This document shows positions 2,302 through 32,933 of a stretch of DNA of 64,000 nucleotides, piece after piece. Positions within the stretch are counted from its first letter, which is position 1, and each line of letters opens with the position of its first letter. A model generated the notes under the pieces. The model was given only the letters and a program-made list of their open reading frames with translations. It did not search any database and was not told the DNA's origin. The stretch covers positions 2,232,001 through 2,296,000 of the forward strand of contig NW_024704772.1 in assembly GCF_018977255.1 (NCBI RefSeq), written 5' to 3'. The DNA comes from Callorhinchus milii (taxonomy: Eukaryota). The position numbers were made by a program, and so were the translations under genes.

Positions 2302-5300
2302 CTATACTCGTTGAGATCCACTAAAGAGAGAGAAGGAGAGAGAGAGAGAGAGAGAGAAAAAAAGAGTTGGTTACTCGCAGCTCAGGTTTGCTCTCTCACC
2401 ACAGAGATACATTCATAAAAGATCCCCGAATTTATTCCTTTATTTATTTATGTGCCTCATTACGTCGTCGAGACGTCTTCGCATATATATATATATATAC
2501 GGCAAAGTGAATTAACCGACGGGGTATCTCGTGGAGGGGAACCCGGGTCCTCTCGCTCGCGAGGCGAGTGCTCTAACCAATACCCTACAGGACTCCAGGG
2601 AAACAGAGGGGAGCGGAGTAAGGAAACTTGTCAAAGTTTTCCCCCCCTCCCACACCCCTGTCTGGGAATCGAACCCCGAGCCCTCTCGCTTGCGAGTCGA
2701 GCGCTCTAACCACCACTCTACTGGTCTCCACGGACGGTTGGACCCCGTTGCGATGCGGGGCTTTCGGGGGTCCGATAAAAAAGAACGCGGACCCCGATTT
2801 ACAACGTGCTCTTTTTTTTTCCTATATAAAACGGACCCCAAAAGTGCTGCGTAAATCTACAGCGCACCGGAGAGGGTTACGCGGGCAGTGTCCTGAGAGA
2901 GTGCACGAGAGACACGGAGTGACACACACACACACACACACACACGCACAGGACTGAGAACGCGTGTGAGACACAGAGATGGAGACGTTCGCGCGCCCGC
3001 GCCCGCAGACACGCGTGCACAGGCAGCGACAGAGAGAGAGCGCGACAGAGAGCGATCCACAGAGACAGAGAGAGGGAGAGGAAGAGGGAGAGACAGACGA
3101 AGAGAGTTGATGAGGAGGTACTGACCCACGGTAAGGTGGGGGCATGGCATCGTGTTGGCCTGATCTCTCCAAGGCCTCCTCGTATGAGGGCAAACCGGGC
3201 GCGACGCTCTCCAGGGTAGTCAGTGGCACCTCTTCAGGCCTCGAGGCCACTGGCTGGTTCACTGGGGGAGGGCTGTGCTCCATGTAGACAGGCGGCCTGG
3301 GGCGCACAACACAGCACAACACGACACAGTCACACGAGGCTGTCACCATCACAGGCATCACCTCCCACAACAACAATAATAATAATTGCCACGTCTCGCC
3401 CCCGCTCGGGAATCGAACCCAGGTCCTCTGGCGTGCGAAGCGATTGCTGCAGGACTCCCACCCATCTCCCCCACTCCGCACCAAGACCGTTCCCCCCCCC
3501 CCCCACCCCAACCCCCAACCTTCCTCCCCACTAACTGGACACTAATGAGGATACTGACCTCGCCGACCGACTCACACACACACACACTCACACACACACA
3601 GGAGGGAGAACTGACCGACTCCCTCTGTCTCTCTCTCTCTCACACGCGCGCACCCACCCACCCACCCACCCACCCACTGACCGTCTCGGACACTAACCTC
3701 ACTGACCGCTTTCCGCGTTGCTTGCAGAAGTAAATGACGACCAGGGTCATCAGGATGAGCAGGACAAAGGCCCCGATGAGCCCGGCCACCAGCCCGGCCA
3801 CGTCAAAGGCCGGAGACTCTGTGGGTGGGGGGTGGGTGGGTGGGGGTGGGTGCAGAGATCGCAGACAGGTTAACACACATCACCTCTCGCTGCCCCCCCC
3901 CTCCTCACCCTGGCCTCCCCCTCATCCCAGCCCGTTCCTCCATCAGGACCAAGTGTACAGTCGTGTCATTTGACAGCAAAGCCCTTTGAGACGTCTCGAG
4001 GACGGGATAAGGCGCTACATCGAAATGCAAGGATTATTATTGTTGTTGTTGTGACTGATCTCAGCCCCACTCTGTGCTGAGGGGCTGATCTTTTACCCCA
4101 ATCTCAGCCTGGAATCTTACTGATGGTCGGGACGATTGGGGAGAGAGAGGATTGCGGAAAGCGGAGGCACTGGGCGGAGTGGGGGAGAGAGGAGGGAGAA
4201 GAGGGAGGGAGAGAGGGAGGGAAAGAGAACCCACTGAAATAAAACTCACTCAGGAACACATCTGACACTTACCCGACTCGTGGTTGTTGGCCTTCACGTA
4301 TTCGTTCTGCAACAAACACACTTGACCATCAGCAACAAACAACAGCAACGTGCACGCACGCAGCACCCCTCACGCGGGGCAGAGTCTCGGAGCGTTTAAC
4401 GGTAGCGGAGCCGGGGGGGGGGGGCGCGGGGGTAGGAGGTGACCGTACGTACGGTCGAAGAGGATCGCCCTTCGGTCGCGATCGCCCACGAAACACAGTC
4501 AATTCACTTCACAGTATATTCCGTGAAGCGCTTTGAGACGTCTCAACGACGTGATAATAATAATAATAATAATAATATTATTAATAGTAATGCGTGCATT
4601 TGACCCGGCGCCTGATCACGTCTTCGAGACCTCTCAAAGCGCTTCACGGGATAGACGGTAAAGTGGAGTGACCGTGTGATTTGAGGAACGAAACGCGGCA
4701 GCCGATTGCGCACAGCAGCGTTCCCCCCCACAAACAGCAGTGGATCGAGTGAACGAGTTATAATTTGGTTTAAAATCAAACGCAAAGATGATTGTTACGA
4801 GGGTTTTGATTCCGGTGAAGACATGGGGAGGGTCCCGGGACGGTGGGTGGGAATTCGTTTCGGGAATCTCTCTCTCGGGTGTGAAACTTGCCGTCAATTC
4901 GACATTCTCGAAGCATTCGTTCGCTTCCTCGAAGTTGCAGACTTCCTCCTGACATTCCCGCTCCAGGTTACAAGGAATGAAGAGCTCAAAGTCCCAGTTA
5001 TTGTAGAGAAGCTTTCGTTGCAGGAAACTCTTCGCCTGGTTCTCCTCCACAAACACTGAGACAGAGAGAGAGAGAGAGAGGGAGAGAGAGAGGGTCACAG
5101 AACGACTGGGTCAGAGAAAGAGAGCGAGAGAAGAGAGGGGGAGAAAGAAAAGAGAGAGGGTCAAAGAAAGACAGAGTGAGTCAGAGAGTCAAAGAGAGAG
5201 AGAGGGAGAGAGAGAGTGTGAGAGAGTCAGAGAAACACAGACAGAGTCGGGGAGACACGGAGAAAGAGAGAGAGAGAAAGAGAGAGAGAGACGTACGATA

Positions 5301-16007: not shown

Positions 16008-16191
16008 TTACAGTGTGTATCCTGTGAGGCGCTTTGAGAGGTCTCGAGGGCGTGATCAGGCACTGTATCGAATGCCAGGATTATTTATACGTGAGGTGAA
16101 TTAAAATACAGTGGACGAAATGACTGCCTGAATCAATGCAACTTTCTCCCTCCCCTGTTTTTCTCCCAATTCCTACAGGGATTCCTGCGCA

Positions 16192-19100
16192 ATGACCCGG
16201 CACGGGAAGAACTGTACGGCCGGTGCGGTTTACACCTACTATGAGAAGAAGAAGGACACAGGTGCGAGAAAGAGAGCTTCTATCTTGGGATACAGTATAT
16301 ATTTATGTTTTACCTACCCTTCTATATCAGGGCATTTCACTCACATAGTACACAGTCAATTAACTTTACAGTATATTCTGTGAAGCGCTTTGAGACGTCA
16401 CGACGACATGATCAGGCGCTGTATCAAACGCAAGGATTATTATTATTATTTCTATCCACGGATGAGCTGAGTTGCTTCTCTCTTCCAGCTGTCTCTGGAT
16501 ACGGCACACAGTCACTTCGCCTCAGCAAAGACGCCATCAAGGACTTCGACTGCTGCTGTCTGTCACTGCAGCCGTGCAAGAATCCCGTTGTGACGTGAGT
16601 CACTCTTAAAAATACTTCTCCTCTTTCCCACGTCGCTCCCCCCCCCCCCCCCACATCAACAACAACACTTGCAATTTATATAGCGCCCTTCGCTCGGGGT
16701 GAAATCCCCGGAACGCTTGTCAGAGGCGGAGTCCATGACTGTCGCGGGGAAGAGGGGAGAAATAAAGAAAAGGTTAACGGTCTGAGGTGACATTGTTTTT
16801 TCTTTCGTCCGTCTCCGTAGACCCGAAGGCTATTTGTACGAGAAAGAGGCAATTTTGGAATATATTTTGCACAAGAAAAACGAAATCATCAAGCAAGTGA
16901 AGGCAAGCGTTTTCAAAGTCTCCCCATCCTGCCCGCGCCTTTCCCTGCCCCCCCACCCCCCCCTTCTCTCCCCCCCCCCCCCACCCTCCGACTAATTACT
17001 CCGGAGGCACCTCAAAGCCCTTCATGGGACATACTGTGAAATGGAGCGACTGTGCGTATCTGTGGGCGAAACATAGCTGCACAATTGCGCACAGCACCGT
17101 GGGAAACCACACACAGTAACTTACAACAACAACAACAACTCACATTTATACACGGGGGCCCCCCGCGCAGTTTTACAGCGTCCCCAGAGCGCTTGAAGTT
17201 GGCGGAGCACTGTTTAACGTCCATCCGAACGACGGCGCCTGCAACAACGCGGCGATGATTGACAGCCTCTGTTGCCCTCTCTTCCAACCCAACTCTCCGC
17301 TTTTTTCCCCCTCCCGTCTCTCCCCCCCCCCCCACCCACCCACCCGGCGTGTGTGTTGCGTCAGGCTTACGAGAAGCAGAAGAACGTGAAGAAGACTGAG
17401 AAGGCGGAGTTGGCCAAGGCGGCGAAGGAGAGCAAGGTGGCGGCCTTCCTGGAGAAAGAATCGACCATCGTCAGCAAACCGCTGAATCCCTTCAGCAACA
17501 AAGCGGGTAAGAATCCCCCCCCCCCCCCCACTCCCCCCTGACCGTGAAGTGGCATACAATTGCGCGCAGCGACGTCCCACAAACAGCCGTGAAACGAGTG
17601 AGCGATTTTACTTTTCCTGTTCGATTTACCCCACTCCGACCCTCCCCCCCACCCCACACCCCTCCCCGCAGGTGAGCAACAGCCCGGCCCCAGCAAAGAG
17701 CCGCCCGCAGCAGTCAAGCCCAGGTCTCTGCCCAGTTTCTGGGTTCCCTCCCTCACCCCGGAGGCCAAGGCAGCCGACATCAAAAAACCCGTAAGCAACA
17801 AAATCGTAAATCGTGACAATAATGATGGTGTCAATAAGAGCAATTTATAATAATGGCAACAGTAATGGTACTAACGATTAATAATAGTAATTATTATTAA
17901 CCATAGTCATTGTTAAGCCCATGCTCGGGGCCCCCCGACAGCTGACCGTTCAGCGCTTTGGGACGTCCTCCCGACGTGAAAGGCGCTCTATAAGCGTCAT
18001 TTTGTTGTGGTGGTGGTTGTTATTAATAAGAATAATTATAACAAGTTAATAATAGTAATTATTAATAATGATGGCGATAATGATGATTAGTAAATACTAA
18101 AGTAATACTACGGATAAATAATAATCCTTGCACTTGATCAAGCGCCCTAGCACGTTGTTTCGACTTCTCAAAGCGCTTCACAGGATACTCTGTAAAGCGC
18201 AGTGACTGTGTATTTTGTGGGCGAAACACGGCAGCCACGTCCCACAAACAGGGCCAGGGGAACTTTAACGTCCACCTGAACAGGCAGATGAGGAGTGAAG
18301 TTTACCGTCTAATCCAAAGGACGGCACCTCCGACAATGCAGCACCTCCCCCAGCGCTGCTTGTGCTCTCAGCTGGTGGGGGTTCGAACCCACAACCTTCT
18401 GCCTGAGCGCTACCGACTGCGCCGGGCTGACAGGCGTAGGAAACTAGGAGCAGGACGAAAGGCATCGTGTCTCCGGCTGACACTGTCTGTCCCTGGCTCT
18501 GTGTGTGTGTAGAGTTCCCGTGTGTAGGGTTCCTATATAAATGCCGTTGGCTTGACGTGTCTCTCGCAGGACAAGACCGTCTACTGCCCGATGAGCGGGA
18601 AGCCCCTGAGGATGAAGGACCTGATCGCAGTCAGGTTCACGCCGGTGGATGAAAAGCTCGAGCGGATCCAGTTGATCACGAAACAGGAGCGTTACGTGTG
18701 TGCGGTCACCAGGGACGTCCTGGGCAATTCCCTGCCCTGTGCTGTGCTCCGACCCTCGTGAGTCCAGCCTTTTGAGTTATTCTTTATTCTCACCTTTATT
18801 CTCACCGAATCGCCTCGTGTTAATAATAATAACAATTATAATAATCCTCGCCTTGACGTCTGCCTCTGCGCCCTGCTCCCTCCTTGGCTAAGCATCTGTG
18901 CAGAGTTGCGCCGCTGAAAGGGGAAACTGTCCCCGGGCTGGAAGGATATCTCGGTCTCTCGGTCAAGGGGGCGGGGGTTGGGGAGGGAGGGGTTGTGGTT
19001 GCTGTTGCTCTGGCTCCCTGAAGCTGTGACTGGACCTGACCAGGCTGTTGTCTGGTTTACAGAGGGGCTGTGGTCACCATGGACTGTGTGGAGAGGCTGA

Positions 19101-19644
19101 TCAAACCTGACATGCTGGATCCTATCACTGAGCAGAGGCTGACCGAGAAAGACATCATCCAACTGCAGAGGGTGAGAGACCATCAGTGTGTGTGTGTGTG
19201 TGTATATCCGTGTGTCCTTGTGTGTCTCTGTGTACGTGTGCGTATGTATCATTGTGTGTGTGCGTGTGGACTTGATTCCGACATTCCATTGCCAAGCACA
19301 TTATCTCGGAGCCAGTTCAGCTCCGTGGAGACCCCCCGCTTCCCTGCCCGCACCCACCCCACGGAGGAGAGTCACTAACTCGTTGGTCGGGTGGGTGGTG
19401 GGGGGTGTGTGGTAGGGAGCAACAAATTAAGGAAAGCGAGTGACATGATTCGGATGTGCTGTGTTGCTTGGGAGTGGGGGTGGGTGGGGGTGGGGGGGGG
19501 GAGGGTGGTGGGGGGGTGGGGGAATTGAGGCTGCCATGATTTCAGACCGAACAATGTGCTGATGGCGCGCAGGGCGGAACTGGATTTGCGGGATCCGGAG
19601 TGAAACTGGAAGCAAAGGAATCGAGACCCGTGATGCAAGCGTGA
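16192..19644 (+). CDS. NOSIP: Nitric oxide synthase-interacting protein (RING/U-box-like), ~295 aa, 8 coding exons
   Basis: Exons: 16192-16261 (MTRHGKNCTAGAVYTYYEKKKDT); 16489-16594 (SGYGTQSLRLSKDAIKDFDCCCLSLQPC); 16821-16902; 17365-17506; 17672-17790 (LPSFWVPSLTPEAK); 18570-18757 (CPMSGKPLRMKDL..YVCAVTRDVLGNS); 19063-19171; 19573-19644 (GGTGFAGSGVKLEAKESRPVMQA*). Total 888 nt, in frame. AATAAA at 19798-19803. Confidence 0.97.
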
Positions 19645-21133
19645 CGGACACCCCTCGTCACCCCCACTCGTGGCTGCGGAAACCTGTCCCTGTGGTCAAG
19701 GTGGGATAAAGTTTGTTCATATTCTGTCTCCCCCCCCCCCCCCCCATGCATTTGATATGATACTGCCTCCTTTTTAGTTGTAAATATCTGTGTGTTTAAT
19801 AAACGGATCGCTTTCTGACATCTTCTACTGCTGTTGAAATAATCCTTGGATTTGACACGGCGCCTTATCACGCCTTCCAGAAGTTTCAAAGCGCTTCACA
19901 GGACACGCCGCAAAGCGAAGTGACTGGTGTATTTTGTGGGCAAAACGCGGCAGCCGTGGATTGAATGACTAAATTATTATTTTCTTAAGGTACCATTACC
20001 CCCTAGAAAAGCGACCCACCAATCGACTAACAACCGGGTTCCTACTAACTACTTGGTAAACAGAGGCACGTGTGTGGAGTAAGAAAACTTGCCTAACATT
20101 TTGCCCGGGAATCGAACCCGGGTCCTCTCGCTTGCGAGATGGTACGGGGTACGCCACGATTCCACGAACTAATCGGATCTGCAGAGGTGAGACATGACGC
20201 CGTTAATTTATCCTTTTAATACAAAGTTTTTTTTTATTATCAAATGAGCTTGATTGTTGCAGGCACAAAGACTGAGCTTATGGGCAATAAGTGGTCACAG
20301 ACCCACAGACTCTTCTATCCGTTTCACAAGGTACGCAGTTTAGCAACAGAATTCAACCCAGCAGCAATGAACAGGGGGAATACATACGCATGATAGAACT
20401 CTTTTGTTTCACTTATAGCCCCAACGTTCTCAACCACACTCTCAGTTCAACTGCAGCGTGGGTTAGAGGCAGAGCAAAGCTCAATCTACCACCATGCGTT
20501 CACACTCCCAGGTCCAGGTGAGAGACAGAGTAAAGCTCCCTCTACATTGTGGGCTCGGAGGCCTTTGCAATCCTTCTGGGCTGATTCTTGAGGTAAGAGC
20601 ACTATGCTTCCCTTTCCCTTTGCATCCCCTTGTTCGTTCACTGCCATCACCGTCCCTGATATTGAATCCAGATAGAGATCGTGTGTGTGAACGCAAAAAG
20701 GCACCTGGGTTGAATGCAAGCCTGACTATTGCACATTTAATCCTGCTCTGGATTGCCTGACAGATAGCGACAGCTGAGTGAGTGAGAGAGATGTCTCTCT
20801 CTTGCTCTCTCTCTAACCCTCTTGCTTTACGGAGGCATTGTAAAACACTGAGGGGTTGCACTGGAAAAATTATCTACCAATTCCCTCCCTCCCGCACACA
20901 AAAGAGTTGTCCAGCTCCTTTGCCCTTGAAAGTAGGGACCTTTCCACAACTTGCCCCGATATGACGCAAGAGCATTAACAGTGAGCATCAGCGGAGGGAA
21001 TCAAAAGTCTAACTTGCCTACTTCGGGGGCCGGTGTGATGGGGTGGAGGGGGGAGAGGTAGGTGGGGGTTATTGCCGGCAGTGCGAGCAGGGCGTGGGGA
21101 GGTGGGAACCCAGCGAGTGAGCGAGCACGTGTG

Positions 21134-21238
21134 CTAAAACTCGTCGTGCGCGACCATCAGTTCTCCGAAATCGGTCAGTGAGCTGCTCGCAAACTTGGTG
21201 TAATTCTCCAAGAATTCCTCTTTATTGAGCTGCCCGTC
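21134..21238 (-). CDS. RCN3: Alternative (distal) terminal exon of RCN3 encoding DGQLNKEEFLENYTKFASSSLTDFGELMVAHDEF*
   Basis: 105-nt phase-0 exon behind a long polypyrimidine tract and CAG acceptor (ctctctcgccctcag|GAC). It is open, ends in TAG and is homologous to exon 23745-23638. About 0.9 kb of non-repetitive sequence follows, then a minus-strand AATAAA at 20233-20238. Confidence 0.85.
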   Translation of the reverse strand, partial: DGQLNKEEFLENYTKFASSSLTDFGELMVAHDEF

Positions 21239-23637
21239 CTGAGGGCGAGAGAGAAGGAGGGAGGGAGAGAGAGGAGTGAGAGAGAGAGAGAGAGAGAGAG
21301 TCGGGGTTCAGGTTAGAGAGAGGACAGGCCAGCTGCCCCCCCCCCCAAACACCAAACCCCACCCACTCTCCCACGATCGAGGCTAAACAGGTGCGTGGTT
21401 TGTTTTCAGGACAAACACTAAAGGCTTAAAGCCCTGGGAGGTGTAAGTACACTTTGCCCACAAAACACACAGTCACTCCACTTTATGCTGTGAAGGGCTT
21501 TGAGACGTCTCGACCAAGTGATAAGGCGCTGTATCAAATGCAAGGATTATTATTACTATTATTATTACTGAATTGACTGCGTGTTTTGTGGGCGAAACCC
21601 GGCAGCCAACAGCGACAGTCGTGGATTGAGTGACTTTTTTGTATAACAACAAGATTACATTTGTATAGCGCCTTTCACGTCGGGAGAATTATTATAATAA
21701 AGGGATTATTAACCTCTGAAAAGCGATCCCCCAATCGACTAACAAGCGGGTTCCTTGTTAGGTAAACAGAGGGGTGCCCGGGTATTGAACCCGGGTCCTC
21801 TGGCTTGCGAGTCGAACGCTCTTACCACTACGCCACGGGAAGTTCCACGCGTGACATTTGTCACGCCGTAAAGTGGAGTGACTTGTGCGTTTTGCGGTCG
21901 AAACGCGGCAGCCAGTTGCGCACGGCGGCGGATTACAGCGGGGAGTGGGTTCTCACGATGGGGTTCCTCTTAGCAAAGCGTGGCTCAGTGCTTTGCTGCG
22001 GCTTCTCCCAGGGTGGTCCCAGGTCGGCAAGACCCTCCCTCTCCCCCCTCTCCCCCCACCCCGGGGCTCCTAGACCCCGATGCAAGGTACAAAGCCTTCG
22101 CACGTCGGAGGCAAGAGGCAGTGAGTGAGTGTGCGCACACGTTCAATCTGTGGTTGTTTCCCTGTGTAACTCCTGTCCTTTCACTTAATATTAAAATCAA
22201 GACAAACCCCGACTTAGAATCTGATGACCAGTCGCTAAAGTGAATCAAAAGAGGACTGGGTTTCTGTCAATCTCTCTCTCCCTCTCTCCCATTCCCCCCC
22301 CCCCCTCTCTCGCTCTCTCTCTCATCCGGCCCTCGCAAGAAGAACAGCAAGAAAACACTCGGGTTTAACCCAGAGCTGCTGATGCTGTTGCTGCGCAGAC
22401 ATGTTACTCGGCTTTGAGCTGCTCTCACTCACTCTCTCACTGTAACACAGATGTGCAGCAACTCCTGCGAGCTTGTACTCATGGCTCTCTCTCTCTCTCT
22501 CTCTCCCTCAATATATCCCTCCCTCCCACCCTCTCTCCTTCCTTCCCTCCCTCTCTTCTTCCATCCCTCTCCTTCCTTCTCTTGCTCCCCTCTTTCTCGC
22601 ACTCCCTCCACCGCCCTCCCATCTCTCCCTCCCTCTCCCCTCTCCCTATCTCCCATCTCTCTCCCTCTACCTACCTACCTCCCTCCCACTCCCTCTTCCC
22701 CTCCCTCCCACTGCCTCTCCCCCTCCCTTCCTCGCAGAAAAAATAGAATCATCCAAAGCTTAAAATAAATCCCTAAAACGAATCACAACCACCCCCCGCC
22801 CCCCCCCCCCCCCACAAACGCAGGCCCCCACGAGAGTCAAGAGATGCAACATGCAATTTCTCCGCACGTCTCCCAGAAACTCAGGTCTTGACGTGATCGA
22901 GTAAAGTTTCTCTCCTGGTTTTTGAAGAGATAATTCGACCGAAACAGCCGATCACGTCAAGACCCATCGCTCTGAGACGTCGTGGCAGGTTTTGAGGACT
23001 GAGGTACCCGCTCGGAATTTAGAAAACAAATTAGAAGAATCGGGTTACGGTGCGAAAATAACTCCCCCCCCCCCCCCCCCCACACCCCACCCCCCCTCCC
23101 CTCCCCACCCCGATCGAAAATTTTCTACCAAATCGTGATTCGGGATCTGCATGGTGTGTGTTTTCCGTGTTTAACGTGCATTGCGTGTGTGCTTAGCGTG
23201 TGTTCAGTATGTGTGTGGTGTGCACTTTGTGTGTGTGTGAGTGCGCACTGTGTGTGTGTGTGTGTGTGTACACACTGGAATATTTTCCCCATGACCTATG
23301 CTCTCCCCCCTCCCGTCCACACGGACTGTCAGACACTGTGACCCACACCCCACTGTATGTGTGTGTGAGTGTGTGTGTGTGTATGTATGTGTGGGGGGGA
23401 AGGGGGGGGGAAAAGGGAAGGACACATCTATCTGTACCCCAATCCTCAAAACAAAAATCGATTGATCTAAAATAAATACAATTAAAGTCATGATCACAAT
23501 TAAGATAAAAGCGAATCATCCGTGATTTGTCGAGATTGGGGTCGGAGGATTCCTCGGTGATTTGGCGGAATTCGGGTGATTTTTGTCAGATTGCGGGTGA
23601 TTTGGGCAAATTCGGGTGGATTCGGACGATTCGAGAA

Positions 23638-26600
23638 TCACAGCTCGTCGTGTTTCCTGGTGAGATCTTCCCCGTAGTTGGTGACCTGGCTCCCCACAAA
23701 CATACTCCAGTTCTCTAATATCTCAGCTTTCGTCATTTTGTTATCCTGTAATCACACACACACAGACACACATAGACGGACAGACACACACACACACACA
23801 CGCACACAGACGCAGGTACACACACACATAGAGTGAGAGACACAGCATGAGCGAGGCGGAGAGCTACACACGCGCGTGCGCGCGCGCACTCGCTCGCAGC
23901 AATGTTAAACCAGCTGCTTTACGGTTTTCCTGCAAATCTCCCGCTGGGGATTAACGGGTTAAACCGGACAGCCGCCTGAACTAACAGAGGAGATAGTGCG
24001 GGATAAAGAGAGAGAGAGAGAGAGAGGGACACATACACACACACACACACACAGAATGAGACGCACACACACAGATTGAGACACACACACACAGAATGAC
24101 AGAGAAAGACACACACAGAGGAGAGGAAGACAGACGGACAGACAGACAGACACACAGATGAGCACAGAATGAGAAAGACCGAGAGAGAATAATCCTCGGT
24201 TTGATAATAGCGCCTCATCATGTCGTCGAGTCGTCTCAAAGCGCTTCGCGGGGCTGCGTGGCTGTAAAGTGGAGTGACTGTATACTTTTGGGGCGCAACG
24301 CGGCAGCCAATTGCGCACAGCGGCGTCCCCAGAAACAGTCGAAGACGTGATGAGGCGCTGTGTCAAATCCAAGAACGATTAGGATTGTAAATAGACCAGT
24401 GGGAGTCTGACAGACACAGAAACCTCCGCTGCGTGTAAGTCCCTCAAGTCCTGAGCGCGTTCCTGACCTTGTTCATGTCCGACTCGTAGATTAGATGTCG
24501 AGATTCTGACTCCGCGTGATCGTATTCCCCCGGGAGGATCCACTGCGTGACCTCCTGCCTGTCCAGCTTCCCGTCCTTATTCGTATCCCGGATCTCCCGG
24601 AATTGCTGGCGTTCCGTCTTCACCCATTCCGGCTCCGGCTCCTCAGCCTCGGGATTGTACATGTCGTCTGTCGGGAAGAGAACAGGACAGAAATCGGACA
24701 CAGCGGCAGCCACAGCTTTACTGCGCCTCTCGCCCTGACCTGGGAGTGTGGACGGACGAGATGGCCGGAGCAGTAAAGAAATATTTGATGAGAGAGAGAG
24801 ATACATTCATTAACTCACAGATAAATTCATCCATATCCACAAAACCATCGCCATTCCTATCGATGTCCTCCATGGTTTCCTGTGGATAGAGACGGGATTA
24901 GAACCAGTACAAGGTTCCTATTAGTTACAGTCTACCCCTCTCCCCAAAGCCCACGATTGTGTGTGTGTGTGTGTGTGTGAGATAGATTCACCCCTTCAAC
25001 CACCGACAACCCGTCTCAAACACAGTTACCTTTTTGCCTGCGCTGTGGCCCGTTATATTCATCATAATAATCCTGGCATTCGATACGGCGCCTTATCACG
25101 CTGTTGAGACGTCTCAAAGCGCCCCACGGGATATCTTGCAAAGTGCAGTGACTTGTGTATGTCGTGGGTGAAACTCGGCAGCACCGGAGCGACCCCTCAA
25201 ACGTTTAACGGTGGATCGAGGGACCGAGTTCTTATTTTTTTGGAAGGATTATTACACCCGGAAAGCGATCCGCCAATTGACTTAACAACCGAGGTCCTAC
25301 TTCCTGCTGCGTACACAGAGCCGTGTGTGTGTGTGTGTGTGGAGTAAGGAAACTTGCCTAAGGTTTTGCCCTGCCCGGCCGGGAATGGAATCGAACCCGG
25401 ATCCTCTCTCTTTCGCGCGCTCTAACCACTACGCTAAGGGGCTTTGAACCCACACCCTTTCCGACTTGAGAGGTGAGAGCGCGCCGGGGTCGACGGGAGA
25501 TTGCGCGGTGAGCTTTGGCCACCGACCGACCGTAACAATGACGTCCTTCATGTAGTCAAACTCCTCCGGGTGCAGGAAAGCGGTGAACTCCTCCCGGGTA
25601 GCGATCAGATCGCCGTCCTTGTCCGCCATCTTGAACCTGCGCTCGTCACGGGACTGCATCTTTACGTAGCTGGCCTTGTCGTCCACGTCGTTGAACTCCT
25701 CGTTCTCTGCAAACGCAAACGCAAACGCTCCCTGTGACGTCGTGGCCCTATTGCCGGAGCGCCCCGGAGCCCCATCCTTTTATGCGTCACACCCCATCAC
25801 CGCACCGAAGAGTCTCCAAACCAAGACGTTGACCGGGAATTCCGTGCCTCCCTTCGGACATCCCAGAGATGACGATGGTATTGTAGTAAATACTAATGAA
25901 TAACCCTTGCATCGGATACCGCGCCTTACCGCGTCTCAAGGCGCTTCGCGGAACATACCGTAGAGTGTAGTGACTGTGTGTTGGGCACAGCAACAGCAGC
26001 GGCACGATCACATTGCTCTCGCGCCTTCTCACGTCGGGAGGACGTCCCGCAAACAAACCGTCGCGGATTGAGCGGCCAAACTATCACCGGGTTCCTACTC
26101 GGCCCCGAGTCAGCGGGCGCGTGGGTTGGAGTGAGGAAACTCGCCCGAGGTTGCGCCCCGCCCCGGGCATCGGACCCAGGACCCCGCAAGCCCTCCGCCT
26201 CGGAGGCCAGAGATCTCGCGACCGAGCCCCACCCGTCTACGTCGGTCGCAACGAATGTCATCGATCGAATGGGTGGGAGGGTGGGGGGCGGCTGATCGGT
26301 TGCGCTATACCACTATCGGCCACGGGAGGACGACATTATCAGCCCCCAACCCCCCCCCATCCCCTCCCCAAGTGGCTGTTTCTGGCCACTGCAAGAGGTG
26401 AAACCGATTGATTTGGGGGAAAAAACATGTGGATTCTTAAACTGCGGCTTTTAAGTGTGAAATTTCGCAACAGCTCAAACGGTTATCACGAGGGGGCGTC
26501 AACCGCAAGATTTGTGCAACGAATGCTCCCCCTTCTCGCTCACAGTTTGGCCGTGGGGGGCCGGGGGCGGCGGGTGGGGGGGGTGGGTGGGGAGGGAGGT

Positions 26601-28825
26601 GTTGAATGTTTCTCCGGTGCAGGGGAGTGAGGCCAGTGTGTAGTTTCGCTCGAGTTAATTAATAACCCTCGCATTCGATACAGCGCCTTATCAATGTGGC
26701 TGCGCCGTCTCAAAGCGCTTCACGGGATACCCTGTAAGGAAGAGTGACCGTCTATTTGCGGGCGAAAGGCCGGAGCTGTCCCACAAACAGTCGTGGATCG
26801 ATTGATCCAATTAGTATTAGTATTCTTATAATGTAATGTAATGCAATGAATTGAATGCAACATAATGAGTAAAATATAATGAGAACAACAACTTGCTACC
26901 ACTCTGGGTGGGGTGGGGGGGGGGGCGCTGTGTAAATGCACGTTGTTGTTGATGTTGGTTGCCCGCTGCTCTCTGGGGACTTACCCTTATAGTAACCGTA
27001 CGTGGTGTTCTTGTATTCCTCCCACGACACTTTGTCGTCTTTGTTCAGGTCGTATTCCTTCCAGTGCTTCTTCACGTTCTCGTCAATGAAACGGTTCTGC
27101 GTCCGCTTGATCCACTCCACCAGCTCCTCGTGGGTCACAAACCCGTCCTTGTTCTTGTCGATCCGGTCCACGATCTTCCTGAGAGAGCAGAGCCAGAGGA
27201 GGGGGTGAGAGAGGAGAGGCGGGAGAGAGCGAGAGCAGAGTACGGAGAGGGTGAGAGTGAGTGAGAGAGAGGGTGAGAGTGAGCGTGAGTGAGAAAATGG
27301 TGAGCAGGGAAAGGGGCAGAGGGTGAGAGAAAAGGTGAGAGTAGGAGAGGGTGGGAGGGGGGGAGTGAGAAGGTGAGAGCGTGTTTGTGGGATCACTGCG
27401 GCGTGCAATTAATTGGCTGTCGCGTTCCGCCCACAAACACGCACAGTCGCTCCACCTTACAGTATATTCTGCGAAGCGCTGTTGAGGTGTTGAGGATGGG
27501 ACGGTAGTCGCACGCGACAGACTCCAGGTCCAGTCTCCCGTGAAAGGGAAAGACAATTTTTACAAAAATTGCTCATTAAGAGTTCCCTTCCCATTCCATT
27601 TAGAGACACAAGAACATGAGAACTTGCTCGATAAAAGGAGACCAAGGTCCACCCAGTTCGCCTTCCGCCCTCCTGGCAGTTGCTTGACATGTCGCGTCCC
27701 AGACTAGACACCGTTATTCCCCGAGATATTATTTCCTCAAAGAAACCTATCTGATTTAACTGGTCTCCACTGTTTAAACCAGATGTTAAACCGGGAAAAG
27801 TAAAGCGCCCTCCAAAACCCTTGACGCTAAATAAGGGTAACTTTTGAAAGGAAATAATAATAGTCGTTGCAGTTAACGTTACTCTTGTCGCCTACTCTAT
27901 CTGTGCAGATCTCTCGTTGGGCAGTTAACTGTTACTTGTCTGTTTCTCTCACTCGCCACGTGTACAGATCAGCCACAAGGTTCTCATTTCAACCACATCG
28001 GGAGAGGAGGGGAGGTGGTGGGGGGGGGGGGGGAGTGGGATGTGTTGCCAGCTCAGCAAACAGAGCGAGAGAGAGAGAGAGAGTGAGAGAGCAATGTAGG
28101 GATGAGCAAGGGAGAAAAAACAATCTCGCAGTTTCTGCTGCGTTACAATTGCTAAACAAGTGGAGAGTGGCCCTTTTACGGCGACAAGTGACATTTACAC
28201 AGCGTCTTTCACGTCGGGAGGACCTCCCAAGGCGCTGGACAGTCAAAGATTTGGACCTTAACCCATTCCACCCTTGCATTTGATAACAACCCCTCTCTCC
28301 CTCAACACTCACTCACTCTCACTCAGTCACCTCCCTCCTCTCTCTCACTCCCCCCCTCTCTCTCTCTCTCTCTCAAATAATCCATGACTGCCCACAAAAT
28401 ACAGTCAACTCACTTTTACAGTGTATCCTGTGAAGCGCTTTGAGACGTCTCAAGGACGCTGTATCAAATGCAAGCATTATCATTAGTAGTGATAATAGTA
28501 GTCCTTGCATTTGATAGATGAATATCTTATATTTTAGTCTATATTATTAATAGTAGTAGTGTCAGAGTTACGGGAGTGAGTGTTAGTGTCACAATTACCC
28601 CAGCCTCTTTTTGCTCTCCTCTGTGGACAACGTATCGAAGGTTTCGGCCGTCTCTTTGCCCAGGAAGGCTTCGTGGTCGTACTGAAATCCCTCCGTTTCC
28701 TCGGGGTGTCTCTCCTCCAGGTCCTTGGCGTGATGAACCCGGTCTTTCTTCTCCGAGGTGGGTTTGCCAGTGACCGCGAGCCAGGCACAGAGAGACAGCA
28801 GGCAGAGCGAGGTCAACAGCTTCAT
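23638..28825 (-). CDS. RCN3: Reticulocalbin-3 (CREC-family ER EF-hand protein), 321 aa, HDEL isoform
   Basis: Exons (minus): 28825-28599 (signal peptide, [10 protein letters not shown]); 27178-26985; 25706-25531 ([30 protein letters not shown]); 24879-24819 ([20 protein letters not shown]); 24667-24468 ([12 protein letters not shown]); 23745-23638 ([20 protein letters not shown]). Total 966 nt, all GT-AG. Convergent with NOSIP, as for human RCN3. Confidence 0.93.
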
Positions 28826-31174: not shown

Positions 31175-31860
31175 CATCAAAAAAAAAAGTTGCTCGAGAT
31201 TTGTGAATGGGGGTCAGCGGTTGTGACAGTCACTGTATCGCTCTGTGGCCGATCCACCCACGTCACTCGGTTTGTTTTAAAAAAAAGAGGCGGGAAAGGT
31301 CACGCCCGTTCAAACCCGCCAATCGCGAGCCCGCTTTCATCCGCGGCCGACCGCCGCCCGGCTGCAACGAGCGCTCCGATTGGTCCTGGGCGGGCTGTGG
31401 CGCTCTCCCATTGGCACCCGAGCGCCACGTTGACAGGACGCGGCGGGGCGGGGCCACTGGAGGGTGGGGGAGAGTGCGCCTGCGCGCAGCGAGAGGCTGG
31501 GCGAGGGCTGGCAGTCTTGACGCGTGACGTCGACGGAGGCGTGCGTCCCTGATTGACAGCCGGCGCGCCCAATGGGAGTCGCGGTGCCGCGTCGATGACG
31601 TCGGCGGCCGCGCGTGGGACGGTGGCGCTGGTGCTGGTGGGCGGGGGCGGGGGGGGGAAGGGGGCGGCACCCTGTCTGTCGACCAATCAGAGGCCGGCGG
31701 CGGGCGCGCTGATTGGCTGCCCGGGGTTTGGGCGGGAAAGGGCTGGGGCCGGCGCGAGGGCTGCTGTCCGCCCGGAGCCTCGGCAGCGCGCGCGGCCCCG
31801 GAGAGGGCGTCGAGCGTCGCCTGGATGAGGCGTTTCTTCGGAGCTTTCTGCTAGGCCGTA
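31175..31860. promoter_or_regulatory. Bidirectional CpG-island promoter between RCN3 (-) and FBXO47 (+)
   Basis: Very CpG-dense. At least five CCAAT/ATTGG boxes, a GC box GGGGCGGGGC (~31445), CRE-like TGACGTCG (~31525, ~31596) and UPRE-like TGACGTGG on the minus strand (31258-31265). A minus-strand donor ATG|gtgagt at 31175 marks a probable RCN3 non-coding exon 1. Confidence 0.75.
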
Positions 31861-32480
31861 CCCCCCCCCCCCCCACACACACAGACACCCCCACACACAG
31901 ACACCCCCACACACAGACACCCTCCCCCCCCCCCACACACACACCCCACACACCCCACAGACACCTCCCTCCCCCACACACCCCCACAGACACCCCCACA
32001 CACACCCACAGACACCCCTCCCCCCACACAGACACCCTCCCCACAGACACCCCTCCCCCCCACACACCCCACAGACACCCCCTCCCCCCCACACAGACAC
32101 CCTCCCCACAGACACCCCCCCCCCCACACACCCCCACAGACACCCCCTCCCCCCACACACCCCCACAGACACCCCCTCCCCCCCACACACCCCCACAGAC
32201 ACCCCCTCCCCCCACACAGACACCCTCCCCCACAGACACCCCTCCCCCACAGACACCCCACAGACACCCCTCCCCCCCACACAGACACCCTCCCTCCCCC
32301 CACACACACACATCCCCCCACACACCCTCACACCCCCCCACAGACACCCTCCCTCCCCCCCACACCCCACAGACACCCTCCCCCCACACACTCCCCCACA
32401 GACACTCCCTCCCCCCTCACACACACCCACAGACACCCCCACACACCCCCACACACACCCACAGACACCCCCCCCCCCCC
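31860..32480. repeat. C/A-rich minisatellite (CACAGACACCCC-like)
   Basis: Tandem units directly downstream of the RCN3/FBXO47 promoter. A similar array at 6385-6770 spans a gap. Confidence 0.9.
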
Positions 32481-32627
32481 TCAGCTGACCGAGGCCTGGA
32501 GGTGAGGGAGGGAGAGGCTGTGGCACCTCGAGGGCCTTTTGCGCCATCACAATCTTTACATTCGACGCAGCGCCGTATCCCGTCGTCGAGACGTTCTCGT
32601 GGCGCTTCGGGCAGGCGGCGGGGGGGG

Positions 32628-32933
32628 NNNNNNNNNNNNNNNNNNNNNNNNNNNNNNNNNNNNNNNNNNNNNNNNNNNNNNNNNNNNNNNNNNNNNNNNN
32701 NNNNNNNNNNNNNNNNNNNNNNNNNNNNNNNNNNNNNNNNNNNNNNNNNNNNNNNNNNNNNNNNNNNNNNNNNNNNNNNNNNNNNNNNNNNNNNNNNNNN
32801 NNNNNNNNNNNNNNNNNNNNNNNNNNNNNNNNNNNNNNNNNNNNNNNNNNNNNNNNNNNNNNNNNNNNNNNNNNNNNNNNNNNNNNNNNNNNNNNNNNNN
32901 NNNNNNNNNNNNNNNNNNNNNNNNNNNNNNNNN
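32628..32933. other. Assembly gap (other gaps at 6514-6671, 10295-10430, 56395-56522)
   Basis: Runs of N. Confidence 1.

What the first reader, a model, noticed from the sequence alone, without database searches (positions are those of the whole stretch)
21134..23745. RCN3 has two alternative terminal exons: an HDEL (reticulocalbin-type) end and a hidden HDEF (calumenin-type) end
Seen: 2.4 kb past the canonical last exon ([35 protein letters not shown]) is a second intact phase-0 exon, 21238-21134 (DGQLNKEEFLENYTKFASSSLTDFGELMVAHDEF*). It has a strong acceptor, its own unique 3' region and an AATAAA at 20233-20238. Either exon completes EF-hand 6 when joined to the ...ESDMNK| donor at 24468. 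Established: RCN1/RCN3 end in HDEL, while calumenin ends in ...TDFGEALVRHDEF and is retained less strictly (ER/Golgi, partly secreted). Inference: this is a splice/polyadenylation switch that changes both the last EF-hand and the KDEL-receptor signal. The TDFGE..HDEF match to calumenin, together with strong divergence from the HDEL exon, suggests an ancient exon duplication. The pre-duplication CREC ancestor may have carried both ends, with RCN and CALU each keeping one. I do not know of a description of this isoform.
Basis: partly seen in the sequence, partly recalled or inferred. Interest (0 to 1): 0.9.

Follow-up and report, generated by a model that had tools for sequence, protein, structure and literature searches.

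The report
Second HDEF-ending last exon of RCN3
A gene for a calcium-binding protein of the endoplasmic reticulum carries, 2.4 kb behind its normal last coding exon, an intact old duplicate of that exon with a weaker retention tail, but the RNA data at hand show it transcribed without showing it spliced in.

Summary
At 21238-21134 (minus strand) there is an intact 34-codon exon ending HDEF-stop. It is in phase with the exon 5 donor at 24468 and has a very strong acceptor and an AATAAA at 20238-20233. It is a true homologue of the HDEL exon at 23745-23638. A profile of database HDEF exons hits only these 2 of 2407 window ORFs. Only this exon is duplicated, and the two copies are deeply diverged (15/33 residues, 58/105 bases).

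NOSIP and a Gla-domain gene as neighbours, plus earlier Pax10 notes, point to the RCN3 orthologue.

The HDEL exon has no poly(A) hexamer of its own for 2 kb, so the HDEF exon lies inside the HDEL form's long 3' region. That makes it a nested choice of acceptor, not a splice/poly(A) switch.

In three RNA runs the block 20109-21240 is transcribed. However, the assembled contigs join exon 5 only to the HDEL exon and cross the HDEF acceptor unspliced: explicitly in one run, by inference in two. Contigs drop minor forms, so a minor or tissue-restricted isoform is not excluded.

The "calumenin-type, pre-duplication ancestor" idea cannot be resolved with 34 residues. I found no paper describing this exon.

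The parts
28599..28825 (-). Exon 1, coding part (ATG at 28825; hydrophobic N-terminus; ends with 2 bases of a split codon, donor GT 28598-28597)
26985..27178 (-). Exon 2 (EF-hand pair)
   Evidence: Pfam EF-hand_7 E 8.4e-11; boundaries
25531..25706 (-). Exon 3
   Evidence: spliced contigs in X1, X2, X3, joint 24878->25530 (cut +1); frame
24819..24879 (-). Exon 4
   Evidence: joints 24667->24819 and 24878->25530 in X1, X2, X3
24468..24667 (-). Exon 5; its last four residues supply positions 1-4 of the sixth EF-hand loop; phase-0 donor, GT at 24467-24466
23746..23875 (-). UG-rich, pyrimidine-poor stretch in front of the HDEL exon acceptor ((TG)n runs of 10, 16 and 12 nt within 130 nt)
23638..23745 (-). 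Proximal terminal coding exon, 35 codons + stop, ends HDEL; junction from exon 5 seen in RNA contigs
   Evidence: X2 record 21 and X3 record 28
21640..23637 (-). 2 kb after the HDEL stop with none of 13 common poly(A) hexamers; partly covered by RNA contigs; holds interspersed repeats and low-complexity runs
21239..21309 (-). Polypyrimidine tract (CT repeat) and CAG acceptor of the HDEF exon; masked by the reads tool
21134..21238 (-). Distal duplicate terminal exon, 34 codons + TAG, ends HDEF
20109..21133 (-). 3' region downstream of the HDEF stop, held as one contig with the exon in RNA-like runs X1 and X2 (X3 from 20259)
20233..20238 (-). AATAAA (followed by ATTAAA at 20220-20215), the first strong poly(A) signal downstream of either terminal exon
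19573..19644 (+). Last coding exon of the convergent neighbour NOSIP; its AATAAA is at 19798 (+). This is the possible source of antisense read-through over the HDEF block

Best explanation
The HDEF exon is an ancient tandem duplicate of the terminal coding exon of this fish's RCN3 orthologue. It was kept under coding constraint for most or all of its history.

It does not sit in a separate transcription end. It lies inside the roughly 3.4 kb 3' region that HDEL-ending transcripts must traverse to reach the only good poly(A) signal (20238-20233).

The likely mechanism is a nested choice of acceptor. The exon 5 donor (24468) normally pairs with the first, weak, UG-rich acceptor (23745) and gives the HDEL protein, and the HDEF exon then rides along as untranslated 3' sequence. 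If that acceptor is skipped, the donor pairs with the very strong distal acceptor (21238). That gives a protein of about 320 residues with a better-consensus sixth EF-hand loop and the weaker HDEF retention tail.

Shown: the exon, its homology, its phase, its signals, transcription of the block, and the HDEL junction. Inferred: the past constraint, the shared poly(A) site, and any use of the distal acceptor, which in the three samples seen is at most minor.
For: - The ORF is intact and ends in a stop.
- Homology is unique. Only 2 of 2407 window ORFs match a database HDEF-exon profile, and this exon scores highest (58.6 bits against 55.3).
- Only exon 6 has a second copy. No flank similarity between the two copies is detected.
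- The copies are old: 15/33 residues and 58/105 bases identical, and only 9 of 15 identical-residue codon pairs use the same codon. Yet there is no stop or frameshift.
- The exon keeps 11 of 13 columns that are invariant in 7 reference exons.
- Its 20 differences from the HDEL exon avoid the invariant columns (2 seen, 7.65 expected, P 7.7e-5).
- It supplies D-G-x-L-x-x-x-E for loop positions 5-12, whereas the HDEL exon has N and M at positions 6 and 8.
- The acceptor has 38/40 pyrimidines, against 24/40 with (TG)n runs for the HDEL exon.
- There is no poly(A) hexamer for 2 kb after the HDEL stop, and a strong one at 20238.
- Ten small runs from three studies, guessed by the tool to be RNA, hold 71-100% of the sampled words of 20233-21238; the three laid carry spliced contigs.
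- Unspliced contigs cover 20109-21240 and further upstream, as expected if this is the HDEL form's 3' region.
- A separate cluster of 7 database ORFs (P0001 group) carries a 23/34-identical HDEF exon behind an unrelated intron-like leader. A similar exon therefore exists intact elsewhere.
Against: - No contig joining 24468 to 21238 appears in the displayed rows for 3 of 3 RNA-like runs.
- X3 record 24 runs unspliced from 21485 to 20259.
- X1 and X2 contigs carry 54 and 52 further letters past 21240. That is the same as the 54 letters in X11, which behaves as DNA (no spliced joints, even depth, an intron-spanning contig at 24346-25094). I therefore read those letters as genomic.
- X2 record 21 and X3 record 28 carry exon 5 -> HDEL exon in contigs that do not break at the donor.
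- The exon has lost two family-invariant residues (VG replaced by AS in the FVGS motif).
- Constraint measured against P0001 alone is not significant (P 0.10).
- The protein searches found no fragment or protein containing this exon.
- The strand of the RNA over the block is unknown, and depth falls with distance from NOSIP.
- The species of origin of the P0001 cluster is unknown, and its gene context could not be fetched.
Confidence: 0.5

Rival explanations
1. Relic exon. The HDEF copy is a former terminal exon, or a surplus duplicate, that is no longer spliced. It is now only untranslated sequence in the long 3' region of HDEL transcripts and stays intact only because it lost its function recently.
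For: Only the HDEL junction is assembled in X2 and X3, and contigs cross the HDEF acceptor unspliced. Two family-invariant residues are lost. No protein or fragment with this end was found in the databases searched. No paper describes it.
Against: The copies have diverged at 47 of 105 bases, yet there is no stop, no indel and 11 of 13 invariant residues are kept. The differences from the HDEL exon avoid constrained columns (P 7.7e-5). The exon has the best acceptor of the three measured at their true boundaries. Contigs cannot show the absence of a minor form, as the tool's own caveat says.
Confidence: 0.33
2. There are two independent terminal exons, each with its own cleavage site. A regulated splice/polyadenylation switch makes the HDEF form a major isoform in some tissues.
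For: In each of X1, X2 and X3 the contig over 20109-21240 has about twice the depth of the HDEL exon contig (61.1 vs 30.1, 33.7 vs 19, 46.9 vs 19.4). AATAAA lies at 20238.
Against: There is no poly(A) hexamer for 2 kb after the HDEL stop. The ends of the HDEL-exon contigs at 23491-23500 are shared by the DNA-like run X11, so they are assembly breaks and not RNA ends. There is no break at the exon 5 donor and no splice at 21238 in the contigs. The tool warns that contig depth cannot rank parts of a gene.
Confidence: 0.1
3. The RNA over the block has nothing to do with RCN3. It is plus-strand read-through or a long 3' UTR of the convergent neighbour NOSIP. This does not exclude either reading of the exon itself.
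For: NOSIP ends at 19644 on the plus strand and points at the block. Contigs run past the minus-strand poly(A) signal down to 20109. Depth declines with rising coordinate (X1: 61 -> 13 -> 3.5 -> 0). A plus-strand AATAAA lies at 21696.
Against: NOSIP has its own AATAAA at 19798, about 150 nt after its stop. The absence of any poly(A) signal after the HDEL stop independently predicts minus-strand RNA here. Contigs carry no strand information.
Confidence: 0.3
4. Chance open frame that merely resembles a CREC end.
For: None beyond its short length. Pfam gives no hit for 34 residues.
Against: 0 of 5000 shuffles reach the observed score in any of three comparisons. HMM E-value is 5.5e-17. Phase, acceptor and stop fall exactly at the homologous boundaries.
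Confidence: 0.01

Closest known systems
Calumenin (CALU) C-terminus, HDEF
   Same: Same tetrapeptide and the same TDFGE motif upstream of it. 18-20 of 34 residues are shared with database ORF fragments P0002-P0006, which I take (by recall, no name came from a call) to be calumenin-type last exons. Papers describe HDEF as a weak retention signal, with calumenin found along the secretory pathway and secreted (passages of PMC3270221, PMC10044922 and PMC12516920).
   Different: It sits in the RCN3 orthologue, not in CALU. It has FASS where all references have FVGS. The neighbouring HDEL exon is just as close to the same fragments (19-21 of 33), so it is not specifically 'calumenin-derived'.
RCN1/RCN3 canonical HDEL end
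   Same: Same gene and the same exon boundary and phase. The LEN motif is shared between the two window exons. [quoted passage not shown]
   Different: Only 15 of 33 residues are shared. It is one residue shorter before the tail, and it ends in F instead of L.
Alternative exons within the CREC family (the CALU isoform 1/2 pair differing in one exon; Cab45-G/-S/-C of SDF4)
   Same: One CREC gene gives products that differ in one exon and, for Cab45, in localisation (passages of PMC12516920).
   Different: Those cases concern internal exons or truncations and are shown experimentally. Here the retention tail itself would be exchanged, and use is not shown.
P0001 cluster (7 unnamed ORFs from public run assemblies)
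   Same: Closest relative of the HDEF exon: 23 of 34 residues, sharing EEFLENY and FGELM..HDEF. It is preceded by an intron-like leader that ends in a Q codon, as expected of a CAG acceptor.
   Different: It keeps FVGS. It could be the main last exon of another CREC paralogue.

Membership tests
CREC-family terminal exon | Sequence homology to known CREC last exons over the full exon | tested here: met
   8 of 9 hits at E <= 0.001 among 1.84 billion representatives are C-terminal HDEF exons aligned over query residues 1-34. HMM score is 58.6 bits. 0 of 5000 shuffles reach the observed score.
CREC-family terminal exon | Completes the sixth EF-hand loop in phase with the preceding exon | tested here: met
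   Phase-0 donor at 24468. The first eight residues give D, G, L and E at loop positions 5, 6, 8 and 12.
CREC-family terminal exon | H/KDEL-like tetrapeptide directly before the stop | tested here: met
   HDEF followed by TAG.
CREC-family gene (host gene) | Signal peptide plus multiple EF-hands | tested here: inconclusive
   EF-hand Pfam hits in exon 2 (E 8.4e-11), with weak hits in exons 3 and 5. Exon 1 starts with a hydrophobic stretch, but no signal-peptide predictor was run and the joined protein was not built.
RCN3 orthologue | Conserved neighbourhood (NOSIP tail-to-tail, PRRG-type Gla gene beyond it, Pax10 region syntenic with human chromosome 19) | tested here: met
   zf-NOSIP on the plus strand at 16.1-16.6 kb (E 5.5e-18) and a Gla domain on the minus strand at 4.6-5.1 kb (E 5.3e-11). 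Pax10 comes from earlier notes only. The anole Pax10 region is syntenic with human chromosome 19 (passage of PMC4122933). That human RCN3 lies next to NOSIP and PRRG2 is recalled, not tested. Table S7 of that paper was not available.
RCN3 orthologue | Groups with RCN3 in a tree of full-length CREC proteins | not tested
Expressed alternative last coding exon | Splice junction from the upstream donor into the exon in RNA | tested here: inconclusive
   Not seen in 3 of 3 RNA-like runs. X3 crosses the acceptor unspliced, and X1 and X2 probably do too. The data are contigs, the tool masks 21241-21309, and only 15 of 121 joints and 32 of 12,747 pieces were displayed.
Expressed alternative last coding exon | Functional cleavage/poly(A) site downstream | tested here: inconclusive
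   AATAAA at 20238 and ATTAAA at 20220 are present. Contigs run on to 20109, so no RNA end is shown.
Expressed alternative last coding exon | Conserved intact in other species at the same position | not testable with these tools
The P0001 cluster is suggestive only.
Calumenin-type exon (specific relationship to CALU) | Closer to CALU last exons than RCN-type exons are | tested here: not met
   Alt exon 18-20/34 and HDEL exon 19-21/33 to the same fragments. The labelling of the fragments as calumenin-type is recalled.

The most novel reading that the evidence does not exclude
One RCN3 gene makes two proteins by acceptor choice within a single terminal transcription unit. One is a tightly ER-retained HDEL form. 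The other is a leakier HDEF form with a more canonical sixth EF-hand. The switch would be set by factors that bind the (TG)n tract in front of the weak HDEL acceptor. The HDEF exon would be the original CREC end, kept in this lineage since before RCN and calumenin separated, so that the HDEL end of reticulocalbins arose as an inserted duplicate upstream of it.
Probability: 0.25. Interest if true: 0.6.

Novelty: new member of a known kind. Interest (0 to 1): 0.4.

Why it matters
If the exon is used, one gene would supply both a resident and a partly secreted version of a luminal calcium-binding protein by exchanging the retention tail and the last EF-hand together. That would be a compact way of setting the ER/secretory distribution. 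It would also give a living intermediate for how the HDEL reticulocalbins and HDEF calumenin diverged. If it is not used, it is an unusually well preserved exon duplicate inside a 3' UTR, of interest mainly for annotation. Either way, the junction test is simple and decisive.

Tried and rejected
- Protein databases for a product or fragment carrying the exon. The 34-residue query was too short for the search for homologous proteins. A 42-residue in-frame genomic reference found no candidate of 23-73 aa.
- An exon 5 query (region 47-113 of the 120-aa genomic ORF) gave 4 hits, none from this gene and none reaching a terminal exon.
- P0014 region 52-91 found only its own cluster.
- Full-length CREC proteins, with names and isoforms, were out of reach.
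- The PDB sequence search gave only generic EF-hand proteins and no CREC entry.
- Rfam gave nothing above gathering score in 19000-25000, so no known small RNA explains the RNA over the block.
- ARAGORN found 0 tRNA genes in 19000-26000.
- Literature searches: 'Pax10'+'RCN3' gave 0 papers. 'reticulocalbin 3'+'HDEF' gave 0 papers. HDEF+HDEL+calumenin+reticulocalbin gave 5 papers, and RCN3+alternative splicing+isoform+C-terminal gave 8, of which 7 were listed. By title and abstract none is about a second RCN3 end. I read passages of PMC12516920 only.
- Depth arithmetic across contigs was considered. For X1, 61 is roughly 13 + 48. I rejected it as evidence because the tool says contig depth cannot rank parts of a gene, and because X2 and X3 do not fit.
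- I first read the 52-54 extra letters past 21240 as possible exon 5 sequence. I dropped that reading when the DNA-like run X11 showed the same 54 letters.
- I considered and rejected a processed pseudogene or partial gene copy. No other exon has a second copy, and the exon starts exactly at an acceptor.
- One search was my own frame slip and carries no information.
- In some searches my first guesses for some boundaries of exons 1-4 were off by 1-4 bases. I cite acceptor counts only for exons 5, 6 and 6'.

Full report
WHAT IS THERE. On the minus strand the window holds a compact six-exon gene. The coding exons are at 28825-28599, 27178-26985, 25706-25531, 24879-24819, 24667-24468 and 23745-23638. 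Three of the introns are confirmed by spliced contigs. By coordinate arithmetic alone the coding length is 966 bases with the HDEL exon and 963 with the HDEF exon. Exon 2 is an EF-hand pair (Pfam PF13499, E 8.4e-11), and exons 3 and 5 give weak EF-hand hits. The last exon ends HDEL-stop.

IS IT MORE THAN CHANCE. Yes.
- The two terminal exons align with score 73, against 18.5 +/- 4.0 for shuffles, and 0 of 5000 shuffles reach that score.
- A search of 1.84 billion cluster representatives with the 34 residues gave 9 proteins at E <= 0.001. Eight of them are short ORFs whose C-terminal 34 residues align end to end with the query and end in HDEF. The ninth, P0008, is an unrelated repeat protein matched on residues 13-33.
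- An HMM made only from 7 of those database exons was run against all 2407 six-frame ORFs of at least 15 residues in the window. It hit two: the HDEF exon (58.6 bits) and the HDEL exon (55.3 bits). The next ORF scored 4.7 bits.
- tblastn of each exon against the window shows a second copy for exon 6 only.
- No repeat links the flanks of the two copies.

This is therefore a precise, old, single-exon tandem duplication. It is not a pseudogene fragment or a chance frame.

WHICH GENE. The plus-strand neighbour at about 16.1-19.64 kb is NOSIP. It has zf-NOSIP hits at E 3e-9 and 5.5e-18, and its last exon and stop are at 19573-19644. It is convergent with the CREC gene. Beyond it, on the minus strand, lies a Gla-domain gene (PF00594, E 5.3e-11). 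Earlier notes of this scan place a Pax10 gene at 57-61 kb, which I did not check. A passage of Feiner et al. (PMC4122933) says the anole Pax10 region is syntenic with human chromosome 19. From memory, human RCN3 lies tail to tail with NOSIP, with PRRG2 next. On that basis I accept the label RCN3 orthologue, but I made no tree of full-length proteins. The organism is coded in the tools. That it is a cartilaginous fish is my guess.

ANATOMY OF THE TWO ENDS.
- Both exons join the phase-0 donor at 24468.
- The last four residues of exon 5 give EF-hand loop positions 1-4. The HDEF exon then supplies D, G, L and E at positions 5, 6, 8 and 12. The HDEL exon has N at position 6 and M at position 8.
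- The HDEF acceptor has 38 of 40 pyrimidines before CAG|G. The HDEL acceptor has 24 of 40 and is preceded by (TG)n runs of 10, 16 and 12 nt.
- None of 13 common poly(A) hexamers occurs on the minus strand from the HDEL stop down to 21640. The first strong signals are AATAAA at 20238 and ATTAAA at 20220. An AATAAA at 21226 lies inside the HDEF exon.
- The apparent ends of the HDEL-exon contigs at 23491-23500 are shared by the DNA-like run X11, so they are assembly breaks.

HDEL transcripts therefore most likely run through the HDEF exon to the distal site. The two forms would differ by acceptor choice within one terminal unit, not by a splice/poly(A) switch.

RNA EVIDENCE. The look-up of sequencing runs with 20233-21238 listed 15 runs. 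Fourteen of them hold at least half of the sampled words, from 4 studies. Ten are small runs, guessed by the tool to be RNA, from 3 studies. I laid X1, X2, X3 and X11 on 20100-25750.
- X1, X2 and X3 carry the spliced joints 24667->24819 and 24878->25530, so they contain mRNA. X11 has neither joint, has even depth, and has a contig running through introns (24346-25094). I read it as DNA.
- The junction from exon 5 to the HDEL exon sits inside single contigs in X2 (record 21) and X3 (record 28).
- The HDEF exon and its 3' region form one contig in X1 (20109-21240, depth 61.1), X2 (20111-21240, depth 33.7) and X3 (20259-21240, depth 46.9).
- The X3 contig continues unspliced to 21485.
- The X1 and X2 contigs carry 54 and 52 more letters beyond 21240. 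The tool did not place these letters because it masks the CT repeat at 21241-21309. X11 shows the same 54 letters, so I infer that they are genomic and that these RNAs are unspliced at the HDEF acceptor.
- No joint into 21238 is among the 15 of 121 joints displayed. However, the certain HDEL junction is not among them either, so that table decides nothing.

My inference from how such contigs are built (my own knowledge) is that an alternative junction at a substantial fraction would have broken the contigs at the exon 5 donor. A minor form would have been pruned. So the block is transcribed, its use as an exon is not shown, and in these three samples it is at most minor.

The strand of the RNA is unknown. 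Depth falls with rising coordinate (X1: 61, 13, 3.5, 0). That fits 3' bias of a long RCN3 3' region, an added spliced form, or NOSIP read-through. The tool itself warns against ranking parts of a gene by contig depth.

CONSTRAINT. The two copies share 58 of 105 bases. Of 15 codon pairs with the same meaning (14 residues plus the stop), 9 use the same codon. Despite that divergence the HDEF exon has no stop or indel, and it keeps 11 of the 13 columns that are invariant in six database HDEF exons plus the HDEL exon. The two it loses turn FVGS into FASS. Its 20 differences from the HDEL exon fall in invariant columns only twice, where 7.65 are expected (P 7.7e-5). Against P0005 the figure is P 0.018, and against P0001 it is P 0.10. 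I infer long coding constraint. A recent loss of function cannot be excluded.

RELATIONSHIPS. The HDEF exon is closest to the P0001 cluster (23/34), then to P0002-P0006 (18-20/34), and farthest from its own neighbour (15/33). The HDEL exon shares 19-21/33 with the same database exons. So both window exons sit about equally far from a conservative HDEF type. They also share LEN with each other and with P0001. With 34 residues, two scenarios cannot be told apart. In one, both ends existed before the genome duplications. In the other, the HDEL exon arose as a duplicate in the reticulocalbin lineage and the HDEF exon survived here.

The P0001 cluster has 7 members from public run assemblies, on contigs of 1-3 kb, with an intron-like leader that is conserved among them and unlike ours. 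This shows a similar intact exon in at least one other organism.

KNOWN BIOLOGY USED. [quoted passage not shown] CALU ends in HDEF, has isoforms that differ in one exon, and is found in the lumen and outside cells. Cab45 has splice forms with different localisation (passages of PMC12516920). HDEF retains less efficiently than KDEL/HDEL, and calumenin is secreted (passages of PMC3270221 and PMC10044922). The searches returned no paper on a second RCN3 end. Gene-model databases could not be consulted, so the isoform may already be annotated.

VERDICT. The exon is real, old and probably constrained. It is a nested alternative acceptor rather than a poly(A) switch. Its use is unproven and at most minor in the three samples seen. 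My probabilities are about 0.5 for a currently used minor or tissue-restricted alternative end, about 0.33 for a relic, and 0.1 for a major switch. Interest is moderate.

Noticed in passing
window 16132-19644 (+): NOSIP gene, convergent with the CREC gene. zf-NOSIP Pfam hits at 16132-16595, last coding exon at 19573-19644, AATAAA at 19798. Only about 400 bp separate the predicted 3' ends of the two genes.
   Followed up: partly
window 2825-5110 (-): Gla-domain gene (PF00594 at 4637-5110). A proline-rich ORF with PPxY-like motifs at 2825-3541 looks like a PRRG-family member.
   Followed up: partly
window 19838-19955, 21484-21562, 21843-21930, 24188-24380, 25055-25183: Copies, in both orientations, of one interspersed repeat family at 70-85% identity. 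There are tRNA-like heads (sub-threshold Rfam tRNA at 21778-21835; a similar stretch at about 20100-20165). RNA and DNA contig depth there is hundreds to thousands of times that of the unique sequence.
   Followed up: partly
window 23746-23875 (-): Long (TG)n-rich tract directly in front of the HDEL exon acceptor, which has few pyrimidines. UG repeats next to an acceptor are a classical exon-skipping element (recalled). This could be the handle for any regulation.
   Followed up: no
window 21221-21226 (-): An AATAAA lies inside the HDEF exon, formed by the codons for L-N-K. Contigs run through it.
   Followed up: no
window 22480-22740: About 260 bp of purine-rich (GGGAGG-type) low complexity on the minus strand, between the two terminal exons. 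There are also poly-G runs at about 21336-21350, 22790-22815 and 23060-23090. RNA and DNA contigs both break there.
   Followed up: no
window 31337-32600: Long GV/CG-rich repetitive open frames on both strands next to a 306-base N run (32628-32933). These look like a low-complexity repeat, not a gene.
   Followed up: no
proteins P0004, P0016-P0018 (database, unknown organism): P0018 reads through a short intron of another CREC gene: an exon-5-like part, about 28 intron-derived residues, then an HDEF exon. At least one calumenin-like gene therefore has a very short last intron.
   Followed up: no
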